The translations under genes and the position numbers were made by a program. A stretch of 64,000 bases of DNA from Ylistrum balloti (lineage: Eukaryota): contig NW_026782173.1 in NCBI RefSeq assembly GCF_031769215.1, forward strand, positions 2,666,001-2,730,000, read 5' to 3'. Below are positions 16,251 to 61,237 of this stretch, one piece after another. Within the stretch, counting starts at the first letter, position 1. Each line of letters begins with the position of its first letter. The notes beneath the pieces are model-generated. The model was not told the origin of the DNA. It did no database searches and saw only the letters and a list, made by a program, of their open reading frames with translations.

Positions 16251-17611
16251 CATGTGAAGTTTTGATAACAACATGGTCACCTTCATCAGGCACATGTGAT
16301 CAGATGGTAAGCATAATATGAAAAAATAGAAGTACACAAGAGATGTTAAAAATGTGAGATAATCCATACAGTACAAGGGCACCCCTCCTCCGCCCGCTTT
16401 TGCCTTCTTAGGATTCTGCATTTTTCTGTTGTTCATTATGCCAGACACCAAATCTCTGGTGCATTGCAGTTCTTATATCCGAATTTTTTCATTTGCATTC
16501 TCTTTGAGTATTTTATTCTAAGGATGGACTTTCACATTTTCGAGAGGTTTCATAGCTGTTGAAATAATATGACCACTATAATTCCACTGAATGGTTTCTG
16601 ACAAGCCTTTAATGTAATTAAGGGACGACTACCTGGTCTTTCATTTTGTTCTTTTCCTTGGTGTTTCATCTCTCAGTCTTTTTGCTTTCATCAAATTTGT
16701 TAACTTCTTGGTTGCCCGATCAGGTATACAAGGTATTCATGTTTTTATGATGCTATGGATGTGACTTTGATCTTGCTTCTTGTCTTGTTCTCTGATCATG
16801 ACTGTTTAGCAAAGTTTGTCGTACACATTTTTGGTATATTAATGGTTGGTGTGATTGGAAGTTGAGGTAGTGGTATGTGTGTTGTCTTTCTCCTATGCTT
16901 TGATAGTACACACTGTACCATCATCTTTCTTTACTAGAAAGGTGTCGGGAAATGGCACTCTAGTGTCATCGATTTCTTCAGGTGAATGGTGTTGTTGGTA
17001 TCAGTGGTATTGATATGCTCAGACAATTCCTTCTGTGACCCTTTCTTGACTACTTCAAATAAGTCACGATATCATTTCCACAAACTAGGCTTGCATTCTG
17101 CAGTGGCCCACTAGAATGTAATATATCTGATCAGTTTAATTAAGAGATGTGAATGTCTTCTTTCTCTATGTGCTCCATGTTGGCCAAAATCGGAGACAAT
17201 GGTCTGCCCACAGCTGTGCCATACTGTTGCTAAGAGATCCATCTCAGAAGAAAAAATGTAGTGCTGTAAGCACAAATTCAAGTAAATTCTTGATGTCTCC
17301 GACAAAGAGATTGGTATTCTTTTGCCTTGACCTGATTGCTATAGATGGCTCTGAACAATACCAAGTGCTTTGTCAGTTGTGTGTTGATGGAAAGGGACAC
17401 TACATTGGTTAATAAGAATTCCTGATTGTTTTGGATAAGAACCATGGACAAACTTTCAAGTTTACTATATGATGTTCTGATTTCCCCATCAGGGTCCTAA
17501 AATGTCTGCTTGTGACCTGGACATTGTAATTGATGGAACCAATACAGTCCAATAAGTCCAACATGGACTTGCTGTGATGGGTTCCTTATTTTATGGATCT
17601 TGTTCCTAAGT
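16251..17611 (-). mobile_element. Decayed Penelope-like retroelement (RT plus linker/thumb, truncated at 5' and in the GIY-YIG endonuclease)
   Basis: Frameshifted minus-strand translation gives, in the expected order: KIHK (about 17595), DCIGSINYNV-SRSQADILGP-GKSEHHIVN, NVVSLSIN, DIKNLLEFVLT, QQYGTAVGRPLSPILANMEHIEKE (17229-17155), KPSLWK*YRDLFEVVKKG (decayed YVDD region), VPFPDTFLVKKDDGTV, HYLNFQSHQP, VVVP-YIKGLSETI, ISTAMKP, VHP*NKI and KNCN. A degenerate hammerhead motif sits at its 3' end. Confidence 0.85.
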
Positions 17612-17664
17612 AAAAGATAAAAATAAATCGCAACAAGTTCAGGATGATAAGAGCAATGTATTAT

Positions 17665-17704
17665 ATGTCTACCAGTTTCACCCGAAACATGTAGGCTTCA
17701 TCAT
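17665..17704 (-). ncRNA. Degenerate hammerhead motif (copy 2)
   Basis: Minus strand ATGATGA-A-GCCT(ACATGTTTC)GGGT-GAAA-C(TG)G-TA|GACAT. The first core C is changed to A and the 5' strand of stem I is missing. It shares the A-GCCT start of stem II and the GAC start of the stem I 3' strand with the intact copy. Confidence 0.6.
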
Positions 17705-18103
17705 CTTATCATTCTGAGCTTGTTAGGATTGATTTTAACCTTTTAGTTCCCTCTACTTTTCAATCACCGTGCATACCTGGAAGGTATCCAAGCAAGGAAT
17801 AACAGAACCCACACCACCATGAGAAGCACGGTGTTGTCTCTACACCCTTATGGATATTGTTCCTAAGTGCATATGTCAAATTACATGTACATATTACAAA
17901 TGTACTAAATATATATCATTAAACAGGGTATACAGAGCCAACGTCGATATCCAGGTAGGTGTGTTGTACAGTGTGGTACTTCACTCGAAATCGGATACCT
18001 AGGTGTATGCAGAGCAATTAAACGGAATATATACATATAAGAACGTTAAGGGGTCGATCGCAACAAATATCAAGTGTCACCAGTTAGTGAGTAGTTAGAC
18101 TTT

Positions 18104-18148
18104 ATTGTCGACTAGTTTCGCCTCCGGTCCAGGCTTCATCAGGACAAT
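18104..18148 (-). ncRNA. Minimal type I hammerhead ribozyme (Penelope/retrozyme type), apparently intact
   Basis: Minus strand reads ATTGTC-CTGATGA-A-GCCT(GGACCGG)AGGC-GAAA-C(TA)G-TC|GACAAT. This gives a 6-bp stem I, full core boxes, a 4-bp stem II, a vestigial stem III within the palindrome ACTAGT, and a GUC cleavage triplet with the cut between 18110 and 18109. Confidence 0.82.
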
Positions 18149-18551
18149 TTTAAGATGTGTTCAGCCCCTGAAAAACTTTGTTTTCGGTTCAACAAAATTA
18201 TGACGTATATGAATGTACATTGTTATAAGGGCAGATAAGCCTCTTGATTACCATGTGTAATGTATATGCAAAGTCTCTCATGAAACTTTTTTAAGAATTC
18301 TTAAAAGGAAATATTTCTGATTTGTTTGATTAATAGATATGAAAAGAAATAAACAATTAAATCTTTTATCAGATGATAAATAATGAGTCTTATTGATATG
18401 TGTTCCATCCAAACTTGAAGCATCATACTTACAAAGTAACAAATCCAATTATCCACAAATTTATTACAAAATAAATAGTACATTTCGTATTGTAACCATA
18501 ATTTTCAATCTAAATGAACGTGATGATTATGAAACATGCATGGCAGTGTGA

Positions 18552-21500
18552 TTAGGATGAGATGAGAGTCTTTGTGTAGGACAATAGTTCTTCACAGTAT
18601 TGCTGTGAACGATGCTTGTGTTTAATGTCCTCTATGGCTCCTATCAGCATGTTTGGGATAAGGCTTGCAGCTGAACACAGTACCTCTGTAATAAAAAAAC
18701 CCACCAAAATTACACAAGGTTAAAGTTGAAATTAAAACAAAAACCTTATCAAGATACTATCATAAAGTAATGCTTCACAGTTCTAAATGAATCTAATAAT
18801 GCTTATAGTCGAAAATCTACTTCAAGGAGACCTTATTACATCATAAAATAGGATGGTCTCAGGTCTGTGTATCACACATAACATGCGTGGGATGGAGTCT
18901 TGGATGTTATATCACTGTCTGCCTAGGACGGTCTTTCATCTGGATATCATACATGTATAGGATGGAGTCATGGACGGTATATCAATGTCTACCTAGGACG
19001 GTCTCAGGTCTGTGTATCACACATGTATAGGATGGAGTCATGAACGGTATATCAGGTACATGTATAGCACAGTCTGTATTAGTTTATCTGGCATGGTCTT
19101 ATACACTTGTCTACCTTGGGTGATTTATACATATCAGGCTTGTTTTAATATTCCTGCCTAGAATTGGTTGTAGATCAAGTTAGTCATCGGATGGTCTGTA
19201 CCTTACCAGCTGTGGGACCACACAACATTACATGATGTACAATGTGTGCACGATTTGTGTGAACGATAGGAAAACTGACTAAAATAAGCATCTGTGTGTA
19301 TGTTGTGTGGTTCTACCACACACAGATGTGTGATTCTATTGTGGTTGATATAAATTTAGAAATGACTTATAAATAAATGTGGGATAGAGATTTCTTATTT
19401 TCAATGCATATAAGAGTATAATTAAGTATATTTCCTAATTAAGCCAAAAATCTGTTAAGATTTACTGTCATTTTTCAATAATATTGTAAACAAAAAATAT
19501 ATACACTGCACTCCAGTAAATTTTAAGTGTTGTCAGTACCGATCCTGACATGTCACGTATACCACTGATCAATTTTAATACCTCTGTGTCATAACTACAC
19601 AAGTTTTCCGTTTAATTTTCAATCCATATAATTAGTTGTGGACAATGTGATCACAATGTATGTATGATGTGCACACATACAGATATAGTAACATAAGACA
19701 GTCTGTAAATCACATTCAAAATATAAGATGGCCAGTAAATCTCATAATTTGTGCATCAACTATATATTCCATTCAGGATATCTATACATCACATTCTATT
19801 TAAGGATGACTTTTTCACTATACATTACCTACCTAGTATAGCCTTCTGGATCCTGGCGTCTGGGTCATCTAAATGAACAAGAAGTCCTTTGTAAATAGCT
19901 TCCACGTGTGCCTTGTACAGACCAGCATCATAGCGTCCATCAAAGCTTCCAAGGTATCCAAGCCATGTCTTAGCGACTGTTATGCGAATCTCATCGTCAC
20001 TATCATCAAGGCGTTTTAGTAACTCTGGATATATGTTGTGGAGACGATCAAGTTCCAGGGAAGGCCCACTGAGCTCAAACACTCTTGTCAACACACGACA
20101 GGCAATGAGACGTGTGCTCTTATTGCTGTCATCCATTGCTGTGATCATCTGGGTAAGAAGGTCCTCAACAACTGGGGCCAGCTGTACAAAGATATGTATA
20201 TTAACATTAGTCTGTAACAGTGGCCAGATGTATTAAGTCAGTAGTAATCACTTGATATATAAACTATATTGATAAAAATAAAAGGTTGCCTGAAGTTTCA
20301 TGTTAAAGCTTGATAAATGTTTTCATGTATCTATGAATGAATTTAGCATTGGATGAAAGAAAACCCTTGGCAAATGTTTCCCTGTATGCAATAAAACATT
20401 GAACAAAATGTATGATGATATGCTGCTGCCTGAACTTACCTTTTCCTGTGAAAGCAGACCACTCTGTAGCAGTGCCCACAAACAGGAGACAGCTGTGGTC
20501 CTGATGGCACCTGCTGTCCGTCCTGCACTCCAAACACAGTTGGGAATGATCATATCCTTCACAACAATAGCAGCAAAGTCTCCAAACTTATTCTGTGAGT
20601 CAATGGTAGTGGGTGCAGTCATTACAAGCTTGGATAGCAGTGAGAAAAACTTCAATCTCACTTCAGGGTCTTTCTCAGGATTTAAATTAGCCACCATAAC
20701 TGGTATGATGTCATCAAGAAGGTCACCAATGACAGGCCCTGTAACAACCACATAAATGAACCATGTGATAACCAATCACAGACATTGACACTGTTTTCAT
20801 GTAATGCTGACTGTTTAAAAGACCTTAAACCTGAATTGAAATCAACATGATCCTGGTCACTGGACCGACAATTCTGAACCTAAGCCTGTTGATTATCTAA
20901 GAGCAATCTAAGAATGTATAAATCACATGTTCTGTAAGTAAGCTGATCAGGGGATTATAACAAAAGCATGACACCAACATAATGCTATCATAAATACAAG
21001 TTTGAATATCAGCTTGTTTCTATATGTTAATACTGACAAATTTCATTCAAATAATGAGCTATGATAATACACCTTCTACTACAATATTACAAGCAATATT
21101 GTATAAACGTCATTGTACAATGACACCATATTCCAAACATTACACCCTAATTATATACAAAGACATTACACCTGGACATTAAAACTGGCATAACACTGTA
21201 ATTTTATACTAAAACATTACCTTTACAGTGCCACTACATTACTACTTTATAACACAAATCTCACAGATATGCAGTTATCTTATCATACTGTCTTACTGTA
21301 CCTGCTTCAAGGACTAGTGTGTCAAAAATCTGTCTTTCGACTGAATGAAGGTTCCACATGCCAAATGTTTCTGTGAAGCCAACGAGGAGAGGTCGGGTGT
21401 GGCAATTGAAGAGTTGTGTTCTTGACTCCATGGTCTGAACTTTACATAGTTCATCAAGGAGCTGGTAAACCTAGTCATGTGTACACAAACAAGGTGTGAC

Positions 21501-24500
21501 ATTAGACAACTTAGCTCTGTGATGAAAAGGATATGATACAGAGTAAGGTTATAATTTCAGCTGAAGAGCTGATAATTTACTTGATTTTTTTCAACTTTCA
21601 TTTGTCTTTTGTATGTCTTTCTTTTTCTTTTTAAGATCTATCTGGTGAAACAAACATTTTATGAATACAGATTTGTTTACCTTATCGGCAGTCTCTTGAT
21701 CTTGGGCCTGAGCAAGAATGGTCAGGAGGAGATTGAAGAGTTTCTGACTAACAGATCCAGCATCCTCTTGAGCTACTGTCAGTATTCCCTCCACACAAGA
21801 CAACAGCTCCTTATGCATCTGTACCTGACAAAGCATGATATAAGTCACAGCCAGTTAAAATGATCAATAATGGTTTTGTTACTTCATTCTGTACATGTCT
21901 GGTGAGTTAAGCATCTTTGAAAACAGTCTGCCTAAATCCTGGGATATTCTTTGAAATCATTGAAATTATTACCTGGAGTTGTCAAAGAAAGTTCCCAACA
22001 TTATTACTTTTATCTCACAGACAGCAAATTCACTACAACACTGTTAATGCAGTCATATAGTATCCATTTAGAGTTGTTACACCTGACAAGACTCTTTGAT
22101 AAAAGGCCAACAATACAGAAAATGACTTGGTGTTTAATGTAGACAGTGTAAGCAGTATATACCTCAAGGGCAAGGAAAGTGAACCAATTTATCTAGCAGT
22201 GTATTACAATATTAAAAGCTGATATTGACTGATAAAATTATTCATTGTATTTATTCAAAATTTATTACTAAAATATGTAAATCAAAATATATTCACTGAA
22301 ACACATAATAAATGTATTCTAATATGGTACGCAAATCCAAACAGATTTACTAAAAAATGCAAATCCAAACAGATTTAATCAAATATGTAAATCCAAACAG
22401 ATTGACTCACATTGTAAATCTAAACACGTTTTCTAAAATGATAAATTTTGTGGAGATGTAATTGTATACTTACTTGTACAGTGTTACACACATCTGGAGA
22501 TAGAATGACATCACACACATTGTCCAGGTATGGTAAGAGTGAAGCACGCTCAGTGCCTTTAACCACTCCCCCTAAGACCATTACACAACCAAAAGACTGG
22601 GTTGTCCTCACCGCCTTGAACACAAGTTTAGACCAGATGTCTGGAGACACAAAATAGCCAACCAATGTTGCGGACTTCTTAATCTGAATAAGGATCAAAA
22701 CATAATGCTGTAACATTAGACTAAATCCTTCTACAAACTGAAGTTTCTGACAGAGATTAAATCTTGTAAACCATTGCATTATTTCTACCCAAATGTCAAC
22801 AATATCGTATGATAATGTTTACATTCATAGACAATGTCACAGTATTTAAATTTTATATACAATGTCATAGTTTCTTAATTTTATAGACAATATCATAGTA
22901 TTTAAATTTATAGACAATGTCATTGTATTTATATTTCATAGACAATGTCGTTGAACATTATTTTTTGTGTTTAAATTTTACAGACAATGTCAAATGCTTC
23001 CTTCTGTTTAAATTGCCATTGTCATCTATCAATGCACATTTATATATTTATATATAGATAGATATATTATTATTATGAATATCAAGCTTACATTGCTGAC
23101 AACACTTTTCTCTTCGTCCACAGAGGCGCGATACATCCCAGTAAGGAGGGGCTCCAGGTGTTGAGTTACATAGTCTTCTGTATTGATTAGCAAGGTGTAA
23201 AGGAGAGAGGCAGATTTTATTCTTGTCTCTACCACCCAGTCCAAAACATCACGCATCAACCCAGGCAGAATCTTTGAAAAATGGCGCATCATCAAAGTGC
23301 GACATCCAAAATTGGGTCTTTCCACTGCAATAGTCCAACCATATCTCGACATTTGAATATATATATATTCTGAGTTCTGAGTTCTGAGAAGTAGTTCAAA
23401 GAAATAATATAAAAAGTCTGACAACAATTCTAAAATGTTGATACATCATTTAATCACAGTCTAATAACTTCCTTCAGAATGCATTTTACTTTCATAAATT
23501 TCACGCTAAAGCAATATCAACACAATGGTAAAGGACAAATTAGGAAATTTCTAGCATTTGTAGAATGTGATAGACTGTGTAGCACAGGAGGAAAACAACA
23601 GAAGCTTGGCATAGATGAGAAGTTTGGAATAGATATCAAACTTATTGTTCTGTTTTAGGCAAGTTTTACATTGTAACATACCTAGTTTGCTTGTATCCCA
23701 AAACCTTCATGACTCCAAATAATATTTGACAATTTTACATTTTCACATGACAAGAATAGTAGTCAAACTTCTGGTGTGGTGGCCAAAGAAACTATTGTCA
23801 TTGTTTCATACTAAAACATGATTTAATGAAACTTACCATTTGGAGGGTAGTGCTGAGGTGTTTCCTTTTCAAAGTCTATTTTGTCTTTTAGTTCGTCTTC
23901 ATTCTCTTTTTCATACTTCATACCTTAAATTTGAAATAGAGGTATTCTTTTAAAAACAGATATACATGAACTCTGGAAAGTTGACCATATCAAGTACAGC
24001 AACTCCTAGTTTTACTGTCTGAATGATGTAATTATCAAAGAACATGGACTACACAGGTTTGAAGTTTGACTTGAAAAAGCTAAATAATATTATCAAAGTG
24101 ACTGTGATGAGTGTTCACATGAAATGAGTGGCATCCAGAACAAACATTTGGTAACACTGTATTCAGTGAATCCACAGTCCATCCGATGTCAGGTATCAGT
24201 CCATCATATATAAGGACTGTCAATACATCCAGTGCATACAGTATCTACCACATGATTGCAGTGCCAGTCAGTGAAATAACTAAATACCTAGTATGTAATA
24301 TTTTCACATAAGCAATGATGTCACTCACTAACAAATTACATTGTGAAATCACAAAAGAGGTTATTGATATGTCTTGGTGATTTCAAGTTTGACAAAGATT
24401 AAAGAACATTGCATTATTTACAAATACAACTTATCATGTGATGAAAAGGATTAATATATTTCTTTTCATTTCAGAATGTAGTTTATAAAACTAGTCAAAG

Positions 24501-32813: not shown

Positions 32814-34470
32814 TCAAAGTGACAAAACGTACATAAAACACTCGTGGCCATGCGTGTCGACCTGGCTATAAGAAACATGTGCCTTGACTTTGATCCGGGA
32901 AAACGTCTCCTCCAATAGCTGTATTCGTAAATCCGGATCTTCATCTGTAATCTGTAGTAAGACTCCTCCAGGACGGAGCGTCCTAAGACATTCGCTTAAC
33001 ATCTTATCACAGGACGGAAGTGCCCGATCTCTGTCCTTCAGCAGCGAGTCTAGTGTCCCTTTGTCCAAGATCACGTGGAAATTATCATCTCTAAAGGGTA
33101 ATGCACGTACATCGCCAGTAATACAGGTGTGTATCGACAGTTTATTAGCCGGCGTAATTTTTGTAAGCACTTCACTTTGCCAGCGAGCTGCACCAGGGAC
33201 GTAATCGAGACAAACGAGGTGTAAGGGATGAGGTAGATCCTGAAGGAGGCGATGGGGCACATGGGAGGTCCCGCACCCAACGTCCAAAAGGCGTATTAAA
33301 GGCTTTTCCTTTCCGGTCGACAATGCTCCCACTTTACTGATCACATGATCGGCAATGATTTCAGCTGGAGCCAGCCAGTCAACAGGTTTAATGCTCTGTG
33401 TTTCGTACTGAGAGATCCAGTGTGATTTTTCACTCAAGACATGGTCTGTAAAATTGAGAAAATGAAATGGAGTCAACTATGTTTATAATGACAGGCTACT
33501 GACCAGTGGAAATATCGTTTGTTATATCGACACGGGATCATTATAAACAAGTGAGATCTCTATTAAACAACATACTTTTGCACTCATATGACCAAGCTTC
33601 TAAAGCTACCAAAGTTGAGCTGTTAGTACAGTGACTTTGTTGTCTTCGGTCAGCCTTCCTACTTTGTTGTCAAATCAATTAGATAATTCTTTAGATACGT
33701 TTCTTGAATAGCCGATCATTTAACATGTTAGTCTTCGCATGTATGGTCAAATCTTATGTCACATTGCAGACGAGTTACAGCAATTCACTAAAACAAGCAG
33801 AAACAAATGTTATTCCTATGAAACTACGCGCCACGAGCACAACTCTTCTCAGTTCCGAGTGTCTCGTCTACTTTCATTTTCAAATCGAGGCATATTATAT
33901 CTATTTAATATACAACGTAATTTACAAGTAAATTACATTTCTGAACCACGGTTCACACATTCTAGAGTAAAGAGTTCATGTAAAGCTGCATTCACTACTC
34001 TGAAACTGCATGTGGCAGTCTACACTATACAAACGTTTAATGTACACTCGTGCCTGATCCTGTACTCTAACACAAATACATGTGCCCTAGATGATCTACA
34101 TAAAGCAGTATGTACACGTGTATATTTTATAAACTCGTGTCCGTTATATATCGGGTATACCTTACCATTAAATCCATGGCAATTCTTCTTACATTGGTTC
34201 CGTGATTGTGAACGAGATATACATGAGACAAAGAACTGCAGTGTTCTATACATCAGTTTAGTAATCGCCAACTCTAGAAGGTGTTTAGTGAATTTTATCC
34301 CCCGCGTTATTTAATCCGGACACACATTTACGTGTTCCGGTAAGGGAGTGCGTTAGTTCTGCAGAATTGTTGGTTTGGGGATGCTTGTTGACCGAGTAAC
34401 TGAGAAGATATTGTACTTCTAAGCACGTTTTGTTCCATTTTAAGAAATTCTTTTTCCATAATAGATACAT
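32814..34470 (-). CDS. CSKMT: Citrate synthase-lysine N-methyltransferase-like (METTL12), class I SAM methyltransferase, 2 exons, about 256 aa
   Basis: Main exon 33445-32814 (acceptor ttttacag) encodes LLDVGCGTS, ILDKGTLD, LSECLRTLRPGGVLLQITDEDPDLR and CFMYVL, matching METTL12/CSKMT motifs. A phase-compatible first exon 34470-34332 (MYLLWKKNFLKWNKT..., donor c|gtaaat) is basic and mitochondrial-presequence-like but less certain than the main exon. Confidence 0.82.
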
Positions 34471-58255: not shown

Positions 58256-61237
58256 ATGATACAACAATACAGTATAGTATATGATCGATTTACAGATGAT
58301 ACATCACATGTGCTTGTTTGTTTAAAGGGACATCGCATTAAGATGGGAGCCAAGAGAAAAAGAAAGTTCCAATGCAATATATGTGCCAAGGTCTTCTTAA
58401 GTATGCAAAGCTTGAAAAGACACAAAGATTTTCATGTGAATCATCGACGAGGATTTAAGTGTGGAAAATGTGCCAACTTCTTCATGTCTAGCACGTTTTT
58501 AAAGAAACATCACTGTAAAAGCCTTTCCTGCTCACGTGATCAGTCAGAAAAAGGTAACGAGGAGAACCTCACACCAGAGAAAGTCAGTCCACCAGTTACC
58601 CAGACACATGACCATCCGCAAATTTTCAAATGTGGATTCTGCCAAAGTTGCTTCGTTTCACAGAAAGTTTTGAACCAGCATATGGCAATAACTTCTGCTG
58701 AACAACATCATAGATGTACAGAATGTACGAAAAGATTCTACTGTGCGCAGCAGTTTCACGAACATTTTCAGATTCATAATACTGTGCACAAGGTGTGTTA
58801 CGTGTGTGGAGAAGTTCTAAGGGAAGACGAGGAAGTCTTTAAACGTCACGTGTTATCCCATGCCGAAGTTGAAGAACAGAACTGCAATCAGTGTGTGAAG
58901 AAGTTTTCAACTGAAAGTGATTTAGAGAAGCACGAAAAAGAACGCATTCCTAGCAGCAAGTCGAATGTACCTCATCAAAATGAGATGGACATAGACTGCG
59001 AGGAAACGGATGTTACCGAAAGTGCAACAAAGAATGATAAAGGAATATTTACAGATCAAGACGTACTGCGACACGTACACCTCGACTTCAGCACATCCCC
59101 CACTTCCAAGTCCGGGAGGATCTTGGAGTTAGAAAAGGAAGTGACAGATATGGGTGACTCGCCAACGCCTACCAGACGAAGCGCTCGCACACCTCGACCA
59201 TCTGCTAAAAAGCTTACACATGACAAAATGGAAGAAAATGAATTATTATGTAAAATTTGCTTGAATGTATTTTCAAACAAAAGTTCTTTCAAAAAGCACA
59301 TGTTGGATCATGTAAGTGAAAAAAACACGCAGTGCAAAATCTGCAGTAAGACATTTAAGCGTAGCCGATACCTGAATGACCATATGAAATTACACCTCGG
59401 ACAGGAACCCCATAAATGCCATATCTGTGGTCTAAACATCAAATACAACCCATCAAATTTTCGTCGACATATGAGAAAACATTCAGGGAACCGAGAATTT
59501 GGTTGCAATATTTGTGCTATGTCTTTCTATAGAGCAGACGACCTCCAAAGTCACATAAAAACACACTATAAACAGTGCAAGCATGTTTGTACAACATGTG
59601 GCATTGGGTTTTCTACACCATATAAACTTACCGAGCACACGCAGAGTCACGACCTAAACACTGATACTCCTTGCGACATGTGTGACAAATCCTTCGTCAG
59701 CAAAACACAGTACCATGACCACTGCAGTCGTGTACACAGGGGGCAGTTCATGTGCAAATTATGTGGCATAACAATGAAGTCCAAATACTGGTTTGAGAAA
59801 CACAAGTTAGAGTATCACTTATCAGAGGTAGCAGAATGCAGTTTAACGGATAACAGAGAAGAAGAGAAGAGCGGTCATTTGAGTGATATTAAACGGGATA
59901 ACGACAACGACCAGGCATTAATAACGCAACTGGAAGATACAGAGGAAAAAAGTTTAGAGAAATCATTCCAGGATGCATTGCAATCTAAAGATAGTACATA
60001 TGAGGAAACGAGTGACGGGCAAGGAGAATCAATTACGTCAGTACCTGAACTAGGCACTGATATACTACCTGTACTACCTAAATTAGAACCTGAAGAGTAT
60101 GCTGAAGATTTGAATGTTCGTTTTCAATGTAGATTCTGCTACAAGGTATTCGCCAGCAGTGGTAATCTCAAGCGCCACGAGAATGACATTTGCGAGGAAA
60201 CTTTGTCAAGTAAGGTGACTCTCGACAAAAGAAAGACTACATATCAGAAGAAAATCAAACAGCAGAAGAAAACACCGACGAAGCTCCTTGGGAAAAACCT
60301 GCAATGTCCAGAATGCTCGAAAAAATTCAGCCGCCGTTGTGACTTAAAACTTCACGCACGTGTTCACGCCGGAATTAAAAATTACGTTTGCGAAATATGT
60401 AGCGCCTCCTACTTCTCGGTAAGCAATTTGAATAGACATAGAGAAGTCCACAACAGTCAGTCCAACAATGTTTGTCACGTGTGTGGGAAATCTTTCGCTT
60501 GTAGAAACTACCTTTTCACGCATATCAGACGCATACACGAGACCGACAGTAGCACTCTTGAGAAGTTTAAATGTGATTCATGCTCCAAGTATTTCACTTC
60601 CTACTCCAACTATAAGCGCCACCAGAGAATCCACACCGGAGAGCGACCCCACAAATGTAATGTTTGTAATAAGGCATTTCGTCGCACAGACGACCTTGCT
60701 GTACACGCAAAAATACACTCTTCAGTTAAACCGTTCCAATGCGAAATATGCAACAAAAGTTTCAATCAGCGTCATAACTTGAAGAAACATTTGAAAAGAC
60801 ACGATCAAGGTTTGAGACGGATCTATCGATGTCCGAAGTGTACTAGGACCTTTCGTCAACAGAAGGCCTTTGAAAGGCATTTATTAAGTCATGAAAGTAT
60901 CGAGGAAGAACATGAAGGAGAAACACAAAGGTATGTTAATGGTGAAACTGCGGTAACCGGCAAGACTACACCTGCCCAATCAGCCACCACCGACGACACA
61001 GAGTACTCGCGAACAGCTCATGCCATAGCAACAGCCATTTCGTCAATTCAGTATCAAGAGGCTGGCAAACAGATGTCTGCAGAACCGAATCAATCCACTG
61101 TTTCACAAGGACCGGACGGCAGACAGGTAATAATCGTCCTGCCAAGTGGCACGGTAGCGCCATTTCAGTGTAGCCTCTGTAAACAAGAGTTCCCAGAAAT
61201 CGTTCAGCTTGTGAATCACATGGTGGAACATGATTAG
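58256..61237 (+). CDS. Multi-C2H2 zinc-finger protein, 993 aa, single coding exon, about 22 fingers in separate clusters
   Basis: Uninterrupted 2982-nt ORF with repeated C-x2-C-x12-H-x3/4-H units, TGERP and SSVKP linkers, two C2HC variants and acidic spacers. Acceptor ttccag at 58214 precedes the ATG. No KRAB, BTB, SCAN or ZAD domain recognised. Confidence 0.95.
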   Translation: MIQQYSIVYDRFTDDTSHVLVCLKGHRIKMGAKRKRKFQCNICAKVFLSMQSLKRHKDFHVNHRRGFKCGKCANFFMSSTFLKKHHCKSLSCSRDQSEKGNEENLTPEKVSPPVTQTHDHPQIFKCGFCQSCFVSQKVLNQHMAITSAEQHHRCTECTKRFYCAQQFHEHFQIHNTVHKVCYVCGEVLREDEEVFKRHVLSHAEVEEQNCNQCVKKFSTESDLEKHEKERIPSSKSNVPHQNEMDIDCEETDVTESATKNDKGIFTDQDVLRHVHLDFSTSPTSKSGRILELEKEVTDMGDSPTPTRRSARTPRPSAKKLTHDKMEENELLCKICLNVFSNKSSFKKHMLDHVSEKNTQCKICSKTFKRSRYLNDHMKLHLGQEPHKCHICGLNIKYNPSNFRRHMRKHSGNREFGCNICAMSFYRADDLQSHIKTHYKQCKHVCTTCGIGFSTPYKLTEHTQSHDLNTDTPCDMCDKSFVSKTQYHDHCSRVHRGQFMCKLCGITMKSKYWFEKHKLEYHLSEVAECSLTDNREEEKSGHLSDIKRDNDNDQALITQLEDTEEKSLEKSFQDALQSKDSTYEETSDGQGESITSVPELGTDILPVLPKLEPEEYAEDLNVRFQCRFCYKVFASSGNLKRHENDICEETLSSKVTLDKRKTTYQKKIKQQKKTPTKLLGKNLQCPECSKKFSRRCDLKLHARVHAGIKNYVCEICSASYFSVSNLNRHREVHNSQSNNVCHVCGKSFACRNYLFTHIRRIHETDSSTLEKFKCDSCSKYFTSYSNYKRHQRIHTGERPHKCNVCNKAFRRTDDLAVHAKIHSSVKPFQCEICNKSFNQRHNLKKHLKRHDQGLRRIYRCPKCTRTFRQQKAFERHLLSHESIEEEHEGETQRYVNGETAVTGKTTPAQSATTDDTEYSRTAHAIATAISSIQYQEAGKQMSAEPNQSTVSQGPDGRQVIIVLPSGTVAPFQCSLCKQEFPEIVQLVNHMVEHD

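What the first reader, a model, noticed from the sequence alone, without database searches (positions are those of the whole stretch)
18104..18148. Apparently intact 45-nt minimal hammerhead ribozyme on the minus strand
Seen in sequence: ATTGTC/GACAAT stem I (6 bp), CTGATGA, one extra A, GCCT/AGGC stem II, GAAA, a 1-bp stem III whose loop lies in the palindrome ACTAGT, and a GUC cleavage triplet. Established knowledge: Penelope-like elements and metazoan retrozymes carry such minimal type I hammerheads with palindromic loop III that cleave as dimers, and an extra nucleotide between A9 and G10.1 is tolerated (as in the ChCMVd viroid hammerhead). Inference: every catalytic position is preserved here, while the adjacent element and two sister motifs are heavily decayed. 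This copy is therefore either much younger or has been maintained.
Basis: partly seen in the sequence, partly recalled or inferred. Interest (0 to 1): 0.85.

Follow-up and report, generated by a model that had tools for sequence, protein, structure and literature searches.

The report
Young solo Penelope-type hammerhead ribozyme copy
The 45-base self-cutting RNA motif is really there and complete, but it is one more copy of the minimal hammerhead ribozyme that Penelope-like jumping genes scatter through animal genomes. It looks intact because its ~260-base carrier arrived recently, not because the host keeps it.

Summary
Observation confirmed. My own descriptor finds it as the only hit in 64 kb. 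An equally complete motif arose once in 1500 dinucleotide shuffles.

The "extra A", the G10.1-C11.1 pair and the palindromic ACUAGU are the published hallmarks of Penelope-like-element (PLE) minimal hammerheads (PMC4209133). So this is a known kind.

- The motif sits in a ~260-nt segment (17942-18204) with undepleted CpG (o/e ~1). It lies inside a 26-kb CpG-depleted domain (o/e 0.16-0.5; adjacent retroelement relic 0.23).
- Its flanks do not match those of the sister motifs.
- The sister at 16.3 kb has different, compensated stems, so it belongs to another subfamily and another insertion.
- The AATAAA overlapping stem I recurs in a relic at 51 kb, so it came with the element.
- DNAAF5 3' regions from five loci of distant relatives carry no hammerhead.

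Other notes of this scan report many intact minimal hammerheads elsewhere in this genome, so the scan has found this kind before on other DNA.

Published work finds lone copies of this type inactive and dimers only weakly active. Rfam models do not detect the motif. The adjacent RT relic could not be confirmed by any profile search. Low interest.

The parts
18104..18148 (-). Complete minimal type I hammerhead (HHR1): stem I 6 bp, CUGAUGA, extra A, stem II 4 bp with 7-nt loop, GAAA, palindromic ACUAGU, GUC; predicted cut between 18110 and 18109
17942..18204 (-). CpG-undepleted segment carrying HHR1 (13 CpG, o/e about 1.0). Read as the body of a comparatively recent ~260-280-nt insertion; exact ends and target-site duplication not established
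18101..18106 (-). AATAAA overlapping the stem I 3' strand. Also present after GTCGA in the 51-kb relic, so it is part of the element family
17664..17710 (-). Dead sister motif HHR2: C3 to A, C11.1 to U, palindrome broken (ACUGGU), stem I lost. It lies inside a 141-nt imperfect palindrome, 17608-17748
17591..17611 (-). Downstream copy of a 21-nt direct repeat (95% identical to 17848-17868). Read as the target-site duplication of the 236-nt HHR2-bearing insert
   Evidence: (D7); the coding context is read by eye
17848..17868 (-). Upstream copy of the same 21-nt direct repeat
   Evidence: (D7)
16251..16296 (-). Dead sister motif HHR3: CUGAUGA plus extra A kept; own stem I (CATGTG/CACATG) and own stem II (GGUG/UAUC); G12 to A; helix III and cleavage-site region shortened
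16400..17915 (-). Heavily broken retroelement ORF relic, interrupted by the HHR2 insert. Penelope-type RT and GIY-YIG-like motifs are read by eye only; CpG o/e 0.23
   Evidence: NOT confirmed
50981..51018 (+). Fourth relic: the 3' half of the same hammerhead family (GCGAAACTGGTCGAAATAAA) at the end of a 29-nt satellite
18552..18685 (-). Last coding exon of DNAAF5 (stop TAA 18554-18552). A proximal AATAAA lies at 18465-18460. HHR1 lies about 405 nt past the stop, on the same strand

Best explanation
HHR1 is a solo copy of the minimal type I hammerhead that Penelope-like retroelements (PLEs), and the short non-autonomous repeats derived from them, carry in their terminal repeats.

It arrived on a ~260-280-nt piece of DNA that inserted fairly recently. 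The insertion lies next to a much older, 5'-truncated PLE relic, just downstream of DNAAF5. The relic had already been hit by another hammerhead-bearing insert. The motif is intact because it is young, not because the host selects for it.

In active elements, two such motifs in one multimeric transcript pair through the palindromic ACUAGU. This builds a 6-bp helix III (a 'double hammerhead'), and each core then cuts after C17, probably helped by the element's own protein. That trims element RNA out of longer transcripts.

Here no competent partner lies nearby. A transcript through this site is therefore expected to cleave very poorly or not at all.

Shown: the motif, its statistical significance, the CpG contrast, the lack of shared flanks, and the absence from distant orthologous loci. 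Inferred: PLE origin, recent insertion, and low activity.
For: Motif: it is complete and unlikely by chance.

Family hallmarks. [quoted passage not shown] HHR1 has the first three. HHR3 provides the fourth, since both of its stems differ from HHR1's but still pair.

Other copies: three further relics of the same family lie in the window.

Recent arrival:
- 13 CpG in 17942-18204 (o/e ~1.0), against o/e 0.23 in the relic, 0.22 around HHR3, 0 of 4.5 expected in 18205-18485, and 4 of 10.6 expected in 17612-17941.
- Poisson P is about 1e-4 against the local background.
- In 12-24 kb, the 280-nt windows with o/e >=0.8 are those over 17.78-18.32 kb, plus a single marginal window (4 CpG) starting at 22861.

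Separate insertion: there is no flank similarity to HHR2 or HHR3.

Clustering: PLEs insert into or next to older copies, and most genomic min-HHRs are single, truncated copies (PMC6765202; PMC4209133).

Activity: single min-HHRs were inactive and dimers weakly active in vitro (PMC4209133). The Anolis Poseidon hammerhead cleaved only with the element's protein (PMC11167929).

Folding: the cleavage-competent fold is not the minimum-energy fold, as monomer (-9.2 vs -10.6 kcal/mol), as dimer (-23.0 vs -27.7), or in 176 nt of context.

Scan notes report hundreds of hammerhead observations in this genome, several called intact (unverified).
Against: - The PLE identity of the adjacent ORF relic rests on motifs I read by eye. 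Pfam on 15 pieces, phmmer against 1.84 billion proteins, a word search and PDB all returned nothing.
- No target-site duplication or exact ends of the proposed young insert were found.
- No second copy of its flanks was available, so its age rests on CpG content alone. Local absence of germline methylation could mimic youth.
- Genome-wide copy number could not be measured with these tools.
- Rfam does not recognise the motif.
- Nothing here tests cleavage.
Confidence: 0.75

Rival explanations
1. HHR1 is the upstream terminal-repeat hammerhead of the same old PLE insertion as the RT relic and HHR3. It simply escaped mutation by luck.
For: HHR1, the relic and HHR3 are co-oriented in the canonical repeat-ORF-repeat order. 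In Anolis Poseidon the hammerhead sits at the repeat-ORF junction with the start codon inside it (PMC11167929). HHR1 contains an AUG within CUGAUGA. Only about 16 positions are strictly invariant, so survival by chance is possible among thousands of copies.
Against: The two terminal hammerheads of one insertion start out identical. Yet HHR3 differs from HHR1 on both sides of three stem II pairs, and in stem I, while still pairing. The flanks show no similarity (z about 0). CpG o/e differs four-fold between the HHR1 segment and the relic. The AUG opens only 14 codons.
Confidence: 0.12
2. The host has co-opted the ribozyme. Sitting sense to DNAAF5, about 405 nt past its stop and 3 nt before an AATAAA, it cuts read-through or long-3'UTR transcripts. 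That would aid termination between convergent genes or tune DNAAF5 mRNA stability, and it is kept by selection.
For: Same strand as DNAAF5 and downstream of its stop. The core is intact while the neighbours are dead. Precedent from my own knowledge: 3'UTR hammerheads of rodent Clec2 genes.
Against: A proximal AATAAA at 18465-18460 probably ends most DNAAF5 mRNAs before the motif. The distal AATAAA is shared with the 51-kb relic, so it came with the element. Undecayed CpGs cover about 260 nt, not just the 45-nt motif. No hammerhead and no similar sequence lie downstream of DNAAF5 in L001, L003, L004, L005 or L006. A lone minimal hammerhead without loop-loop contacts or a partner is expected to be nearly inactive.
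Confidence: 0.07
3. It is a chance match to the hammerhead consensus with no ribozyme ancestry.
For: Rfam models give no significant hit. The loose descriptor occurs in about 6% of shuffled windows.
Against: The strict version occurred once in 1500 shuffles. Three further relics share TGATGAAG(CC) and GAAACTNGT(C/A)GA beyond the core requirements, two of them within 1.9 kb and co-oriented. All non-required PLE hallmarks are present.
Confidence: 0.02

Closest known systems
Minimal hammerheads of metazoan Penelope-like elements (Cervera & de la Pena 2014, PMC4209133; Lunse, Weinberg & Breaker 2017, cited in PMC6765202)
   Same: Type I topology; full catalytic core; an unpaired nucleotide between A9 and G10.1; the G10.1-C11.1 pair; a tiny helix III inside a palindrome (ACUAGU) that allows a dimeric double hammerhead; no loop-loop tertiary contacts; occurrence as a single, dispersed copy near a decayed PLE.
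   Different: Stem II is 4 bp. The Schistosoma families described have 7-8 bp. Stem I is a clean 6 bp without a recognisable loop 1 or closing stem. Membership in a terminal repeat of a full PLE could not be shown for this copy.
Poseidon (PAc) hammerhead of Anolis carolinensis (PMC11167929)
   Same: The hammerhead lies at the repeat-ORF junction, upstream of and co-oriented with the RT ORF. An AC-rich stretch follows just downstream (here CTAACTACTCACTAAC). A start codon sits within the motif.
   Different: Here the AUG is A6-U7-G8 and opens only 14 codons. No intact ORF follows. Protein-assisted cleavage cannot be tested.
Metazoan non-LTR retrozymes (Cervera & de la Pena 2020, PMC7229834; PLE-derived per bioRxiv 10.64898/2026.07.22.740005)
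   Same: A small (~170-400 nt) non-coding unit carrying a type I hammerhead, of low GC, thought to be mobilised by PLE machinery.
   Different: Retrozymes are tandem repeats. In invertebrates they carry canonical hammerheads with loop 1-loop 2 contacts that cleave efficiently. Here the unit is single, and the motif 440 nt downstream belongs to a different, dead insert.
CChMVd plus-strand hammerhead (De la Pena & Flores 2001, cited in PMC4209133)
   Same: An extra nucleotide between A9 and G10.1 that is compatible with activity.
   Different: That is a viroid type III hammerhead with a stable helix III and tertiary contacts. The two are otherwise unrelated.

Membership tests
Hammerhead ribozyme, type I | Conserved core C3 U4 G5 A6 N7 G8 A9 / G12 A13 A14 / A15.1-U16.1 / H17, with G10.1-C11.1 | tested here: met
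   all positions are consensus; one inserted A lies after A9
Hammerhead ribozyme, type I | Three helices around the core, with the 5' and 3' ends in helix I | tested here: met
   Stem I 6 bp and stem II 4 bp. Helix III is only A15.1-U16.1 as a monomer, and 6 bp as a dimer
Hammerhead ribozyme, type I | Match to a curated covariance model (Rfam Hammerhead_1, _3, HH9, HH10, II) | tested here: not met
   no hit. Only RAGATH-1-hammerhead at 11.5 bits against a gathering score of 56.3. No Rfam hammerhead model detected this minimal variant, so the miss is weak evidence against it
Hammerhead ribozyme, type I | Mg-dependent self-cleavage 3' of position 17 | not testable with these tools
   needs in vitro transcription
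PLE minimal hammerhead (Cervera & de la Pena 2014) | [quoted passage not shown] | tested here: met
   A at 18135. The same A is present in HHR2 and HHR3. Criterion
PLE minimal hammerhead (Cervera & de la Pena 2014) | Palindromic 15.2-16.2 / loop 3 that permits a dimeric helix III | tested here: met
   ACTAGT at 18111-18116. Double-hammerhead pairing is feasible at -23.0 kcal/mol
PLE minimal hammerhead (Cervera & de la Pena 2014) | Located in the terminal repeat of, or next to, a Penelope-like RT/GIY-YIG element | tested here: inconclusive
   A co-oriented broken ORF with PLE-like motifs starts about 190 nt downstream. No profile or homology tool confirmed it
PLE minimal hammerhead (Cervera & de la Pena 2014) | Belongs to a multi-copy family with compensatory stem changes within the genome | tested here: met
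   Three relics in the window, and HHR3 has compensated stems I and II. Genome-wide numbers come only from unverified scan notes
Metazoan non-LTR retrozyme | Head-to-tail tandem repeats of ~170-400 nt, each with a hammerhead | tested here: not met
   No tandem or direct repeat of the HHR1 unit. HHR2, 440 nt away, shares only the motif
Metazoan non-LTR retrozyme | Canonical hammerhead with loop 1-loop 2 tertiary contacts (invertebrate type) | tested here: not met
   Stem I is an open 6-bp helix without a loop or bulge
Host-conserved 3'UTR hammerhead | Presence at the orthologous position in related species | tested here: not met
   L001, L003, L004, L005 and L006 all contain the DNAAF5 last exon, but no hammerhead and no similar flank. 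These relatives are distant (66-72% aa identity in the penultimate exon). The closest relative (90%, L002) has too short a contig

The most novel reading that the evidence does not exclude
The ~260-nt unit is a currently mobile, non-coding, PLE-dependent hammerhead element. Its landing just past DNAAF5 brought a working ribozyme plus an AATAAA into read-through transcripts. Self-cleavage 3 nt before the poly(A) signal, with trans-dimerisation to RNAs from sister copies, would then shape 3'-end formation or termination between two convergent genes. That would be an early stage of ribozyme exaptation.
Probability: 0.05. Interest if true: 0.5.

Novelty: new member of a known kind. Interest (0 to 1): 0.15.

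Why it matters
It matters little beyond annotation. It adds one more intact copy to a ribozyme class already known to occur in thousands of copies in many invertebrate genomes.

Two points are useful:
- CpG decay offers a quick internal clock to separate 'young' from 'maintained' for such motifs in a methylated bivalve-type genome.
- Rfam's hammerhead models miss this minimal variant. Genome annotation pipelines will therefore under-count it.

If the low-probability exaptation reading were true, it would be a rare case of catching a transposon ribozyme being recruited to a host gene's 3' end.

Tried and rejected
1. Rfam at gathering score and at permissive E-values: no hammerhead hit.
2. Confirming the RT relic, all blank:
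   - Pfam on 15 stop-free pieces
   - phmmer of a 55-aa piece against 1.84 billion representatives
   - word-indexed search
   - PDB
   - tblastn with an RVT_1 protein from L003, which proved to be an unrelated LINE-type RT
3. Shared terminal-repeat flanks between HHR1 and HHR3: local alignment was no better than shuffles; blastn with word size 7 found nothing.
4. Target-site duplication around the HHR1 unit: only an 8-mer (ATGTACAT) and a 9-mer recur, which is not above chance in AT-rich DNA.
5. Orthologous site in a close relative:
   - the closest hit (90% aa) sits on a 1.2-kb contig that ends before the 3' region
   - the last-exon search found no candidates
   - exact look-ups of two small ORFs flanking HHR1 were not on record
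6. tRNA-like (SINE) promoter near the motif: none.
7. Scan-note look-up by sequence: blank.
8. Metagenome scan for the core with variable stem II: three matches. Only L009 looks like a real minimal hammerhead of the same type, and it has no ORF beside it.
9. Lunse et al. 2017 is not held in the library.

Full report
WHAT IS THERE

On the minus strand from 18148 to 18104 the sequence reads, in order:
- ATTGTC
- CTGATGA
- A
- GCCT, GGACCGG, AGGC
- GAAA
- CTAG
- TC
- GACAAT

In hammerhead numbering this gives:
- a 6-bp stem I
- the C3-A9 box
- one inserted A
- a 4-bp stem II closed by G10.1-C11.1, with a 7-nt loop
- G12 A13 A14
- A15.1 and U16.1 at the ends of the palindrome ACUAGU
- C17, with the cut predicted between 18110 and 18109

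A structure descriptor I wrote finds this as the only hit on either strand of the 64-kb window. Among 1500 dinucleotide-preserving shuffles, a loose version hit 0.06 times per window. A version as complete as the real motif appeared once.

Rfam 15 does not see it:
- nothing at gathering scores
- nothing at E<=10 in 1.1 kb
- only an 11.5-bit RAGATH-1-hammerhead alignment in 86 nt

No Rfam hammerhead model picked up this minimal variant, so the miss counts little against it.

WHAT KIND IT IS

Cervera and de la Pena (PMC4209133) described 'min-HHRs' in the terminal repeats of Penelope-like elements (PLEs), and scattered in thousands of mostly single copies through metazoan genomes. They list four features that were not in their descriptor but recur:
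- a conserved G10.1-C11.1 pair
- palindromic 15.2-16.2/loop 3
- consensus families full of compensatory changes

HHR1 has the first three. So the 'extra A' is a hallmark rather than a blemish.

The window supplies the fourth feature. Three further relics share TGATGAAG(CC) and GAAACTNGT(C/A)GA:
- HHR2 (about 17664-17710) has C3 changed to A, C11.1 changed to U, a broken palindrome and no stem I.
- HHR3 (16251-16296) keeps CUGAUGA plus the extra A. It has its own 6-bp stem I (CATGTG/CACATG) and its own stem II (GGUG/UAUC). That is a change on both sides of three stem II pairs relative to HHR1. It has also lost G12 and part of helix III.
- The 51-kb relic is the 3' half of the motif at the end of a 29-nt satellite.

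A public metagenome contig (L009) carries the same core, extra A and ACUAGUC with yet other stems.

CONTEXT

Gene context:
- DNAAF5 lies on the minus strand (Pfam TPR_DNAAF5, 2e-76; homologues named dynein assembly factor 5).
- Its last exon ends with TAA at 18554-18552.
- An AATAAA follows at 18465-18460.
- A second AATAAA, at 18106-18101, overlaps HHR1's stem I.
- That second signal follows GTCGA in the 51-kb relic too. It therefore belongs to the element family, not to the gene.

The ORF relic:
- About 190 nt downstream of HHR1, on the same strand, a badly broken ORF runs from about 17915 to 16400.
- It falls into more than a dozen stop-free pieces in three frames.
- By eye it carries stretches that resemble PLE RT and GIY-YIG-linker motifs.
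- I could not confirm this with any tool. Pfam, phmmer against 1.84 billion proteins, a word search and PDB were all blank.
- It therefore stays an inference.

The HHR2 insert:
- HHR2 sits inside a 141-nt imperfect palindrome.
- It is flanked by a 21-nt direct repeat, 95% identical (D7).
- The upstream copy continues the ORF's upstream reading context, and the downstream copy continues its downstream context.
- This reads as a target-site duplication of a 236-nt hammerhead-bearing insert into the older element.
- Inverted truncated copies and nested insertions are typical of PLEs (PMC8557442; PMC6765202).

YOUNGER OR MAINTAINED?

The window is bimodal for CpG. Positions 1-26 kb are depleted (o/e 0.16-0.5). 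Most of 26-56 kb is not.

Inside the depleted domain:
- The relic has o/e 0.23 and the HHR3 region 0.22.
- 18205-18485 has 0 CpG where 4.5 would be expected.
- 17612-17941 has 4 where 10.6 would be expected.
- 17942-18204, which holds HHR1, has 13 CpG, o/e about 1.0.
- Poisson P is about 1e-4 against the local background.
- Within 12-24 kb, the 280-nt windows reaching o/e 0.8 are those over this segment, plus one marginal window (4 CpG) starting at 22861.

Ten of the 13 CpGs lie outside the 45-nt motif. Selection on the ribozyme therefore cannot explain them. A recent arrival of the whole segment can.

Consistent with that:
- HHR1's flanks show no similarity to those of HHR2 or HHR3.
- HHR3's compensated stems mark it as another subfamily. 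HHR1 and HHR3 are thus not the twin terminal repeats of one insertion.

- I fetched DNAAF5 loci from relatives.
- All five usable loci contain the last exon.
- None has a hammerhead by a relaxed descriptor, or any similarity to the flank, in 0.7-8.9 kb downstream.
- These relatives are distant (66-72% identity in the neighbouring exon), so this excludes only deep conservation.
- The closest relative (90%) is on too short a contig.

Other notes of this scan mention hammerheads in 259 findings on this genome. Several are called intact, and follow-ups judged them ordinary Penelope-type relics of what appears to be a scallop. These are unverified AI notes, but they match the published picture. The scan has therefore met this kind before on other DNA of this genome.

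HOW IT WORKS

In active elements, two motifs in one multimeric transcript pair through the palindrome to build a 6-bp helix III. Each composite core then cuts after C17.

Published findings on activity:
- Single min-HHRs are inactive in vitro, and dimers only weakly active.
- The Anolis Poseidon hammerhead cleaves only when the element's protein is present. It is not needed for insertion in vitro.
- The function in PLEs is still called unclear.

For HHR1:
- The cleavage-competent monomer fold scores -9.2 kcal/mol, against an MFE of -10.6 that pairs C3-G5 away.
- The double hammerhead scores -23.0, against a dimer MFE of -27.7.
- In 176 nt of context, stem I is not in the MFE.
- The nearest other motif (HHR2) is dead and has a non-matching palindrome.

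I therefore expect negligible self-cleavage at this locus. This is an inference and was not tested.

VERDICT

The identification as a Penelope-type minimal hammerhead is supported.

'Younger' is supported. 'Maintained' is not. This is a new member of a well-described kind, and interest is low.

The residual novel reading is that a young, still competent copy is being drawn into DNAAF5 3'-end formation. I put that at about 5%.

Noticed in passing
window 50900-51018 (+): A 29-nt satellite (unit roughly TGCACGGTGTGCGATGTGTGCATGATGTC) ends in the 3' half of the same hammerhead family plus AATAAA. It looks like a stem II/core segment expanded into a minisatellite.
   Followed up: partly
window 17608-17748: A 141-nt imperfect palindrome around the dead HHR2 gives a weak MIR7125-like hairpin hit (21 bits, E 0.16). 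It is probably just an inverted truncated PLE-type copy.
   Followed up: partly
window 1-26000 versus 26000-56000: A sharp CpG bimodality: o/e 0.16-0.5 across the DNAAF5 side, and about 0.6-1.06 (mostly 0.75-1.06) beyond 26 kb. This suggests a boundary between germline-methylated and unmethylated domains near the DNAAF5 5' end.
   Followed up: no
window 18849-19054: Three to four tandem copies of a 70-nt unit (79-97% identical) in the last DNAAF5 intron.
   Followed up: no
window 58256-61237 (+): An uninterrupted 993-aa ORF with many C2H2 zinc fingers (Pfam zf-C2H2, 7e-56).
   Followed up: no
window 32814-33476 (-) and 48547-48981 (-): ORFs with a class I SAM-methyltransferase domain and the start of a sodium:solute symporter domain. 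These are presumably exons of neighbouring genes.
   Followed up: no
L009 1125-1156 (-): The public contig JAAUXW010141301.1 carries a minimal hammerhead with the same core, extra A and ACUAGUC. Its stem II is GGC/GCC, and a long G-rich closing stem lies beyond an internal loop in helix I. No ORF lies beside it.
   Followed up: partly
L003 3931-5298 (-): In a distant relative, a 455-aa LINE-type RT (RVT_1) ORF lies among the DNAAF5 exons, presumably in an intron. It is unrelated to the relic in the window.
   Followed up: partly
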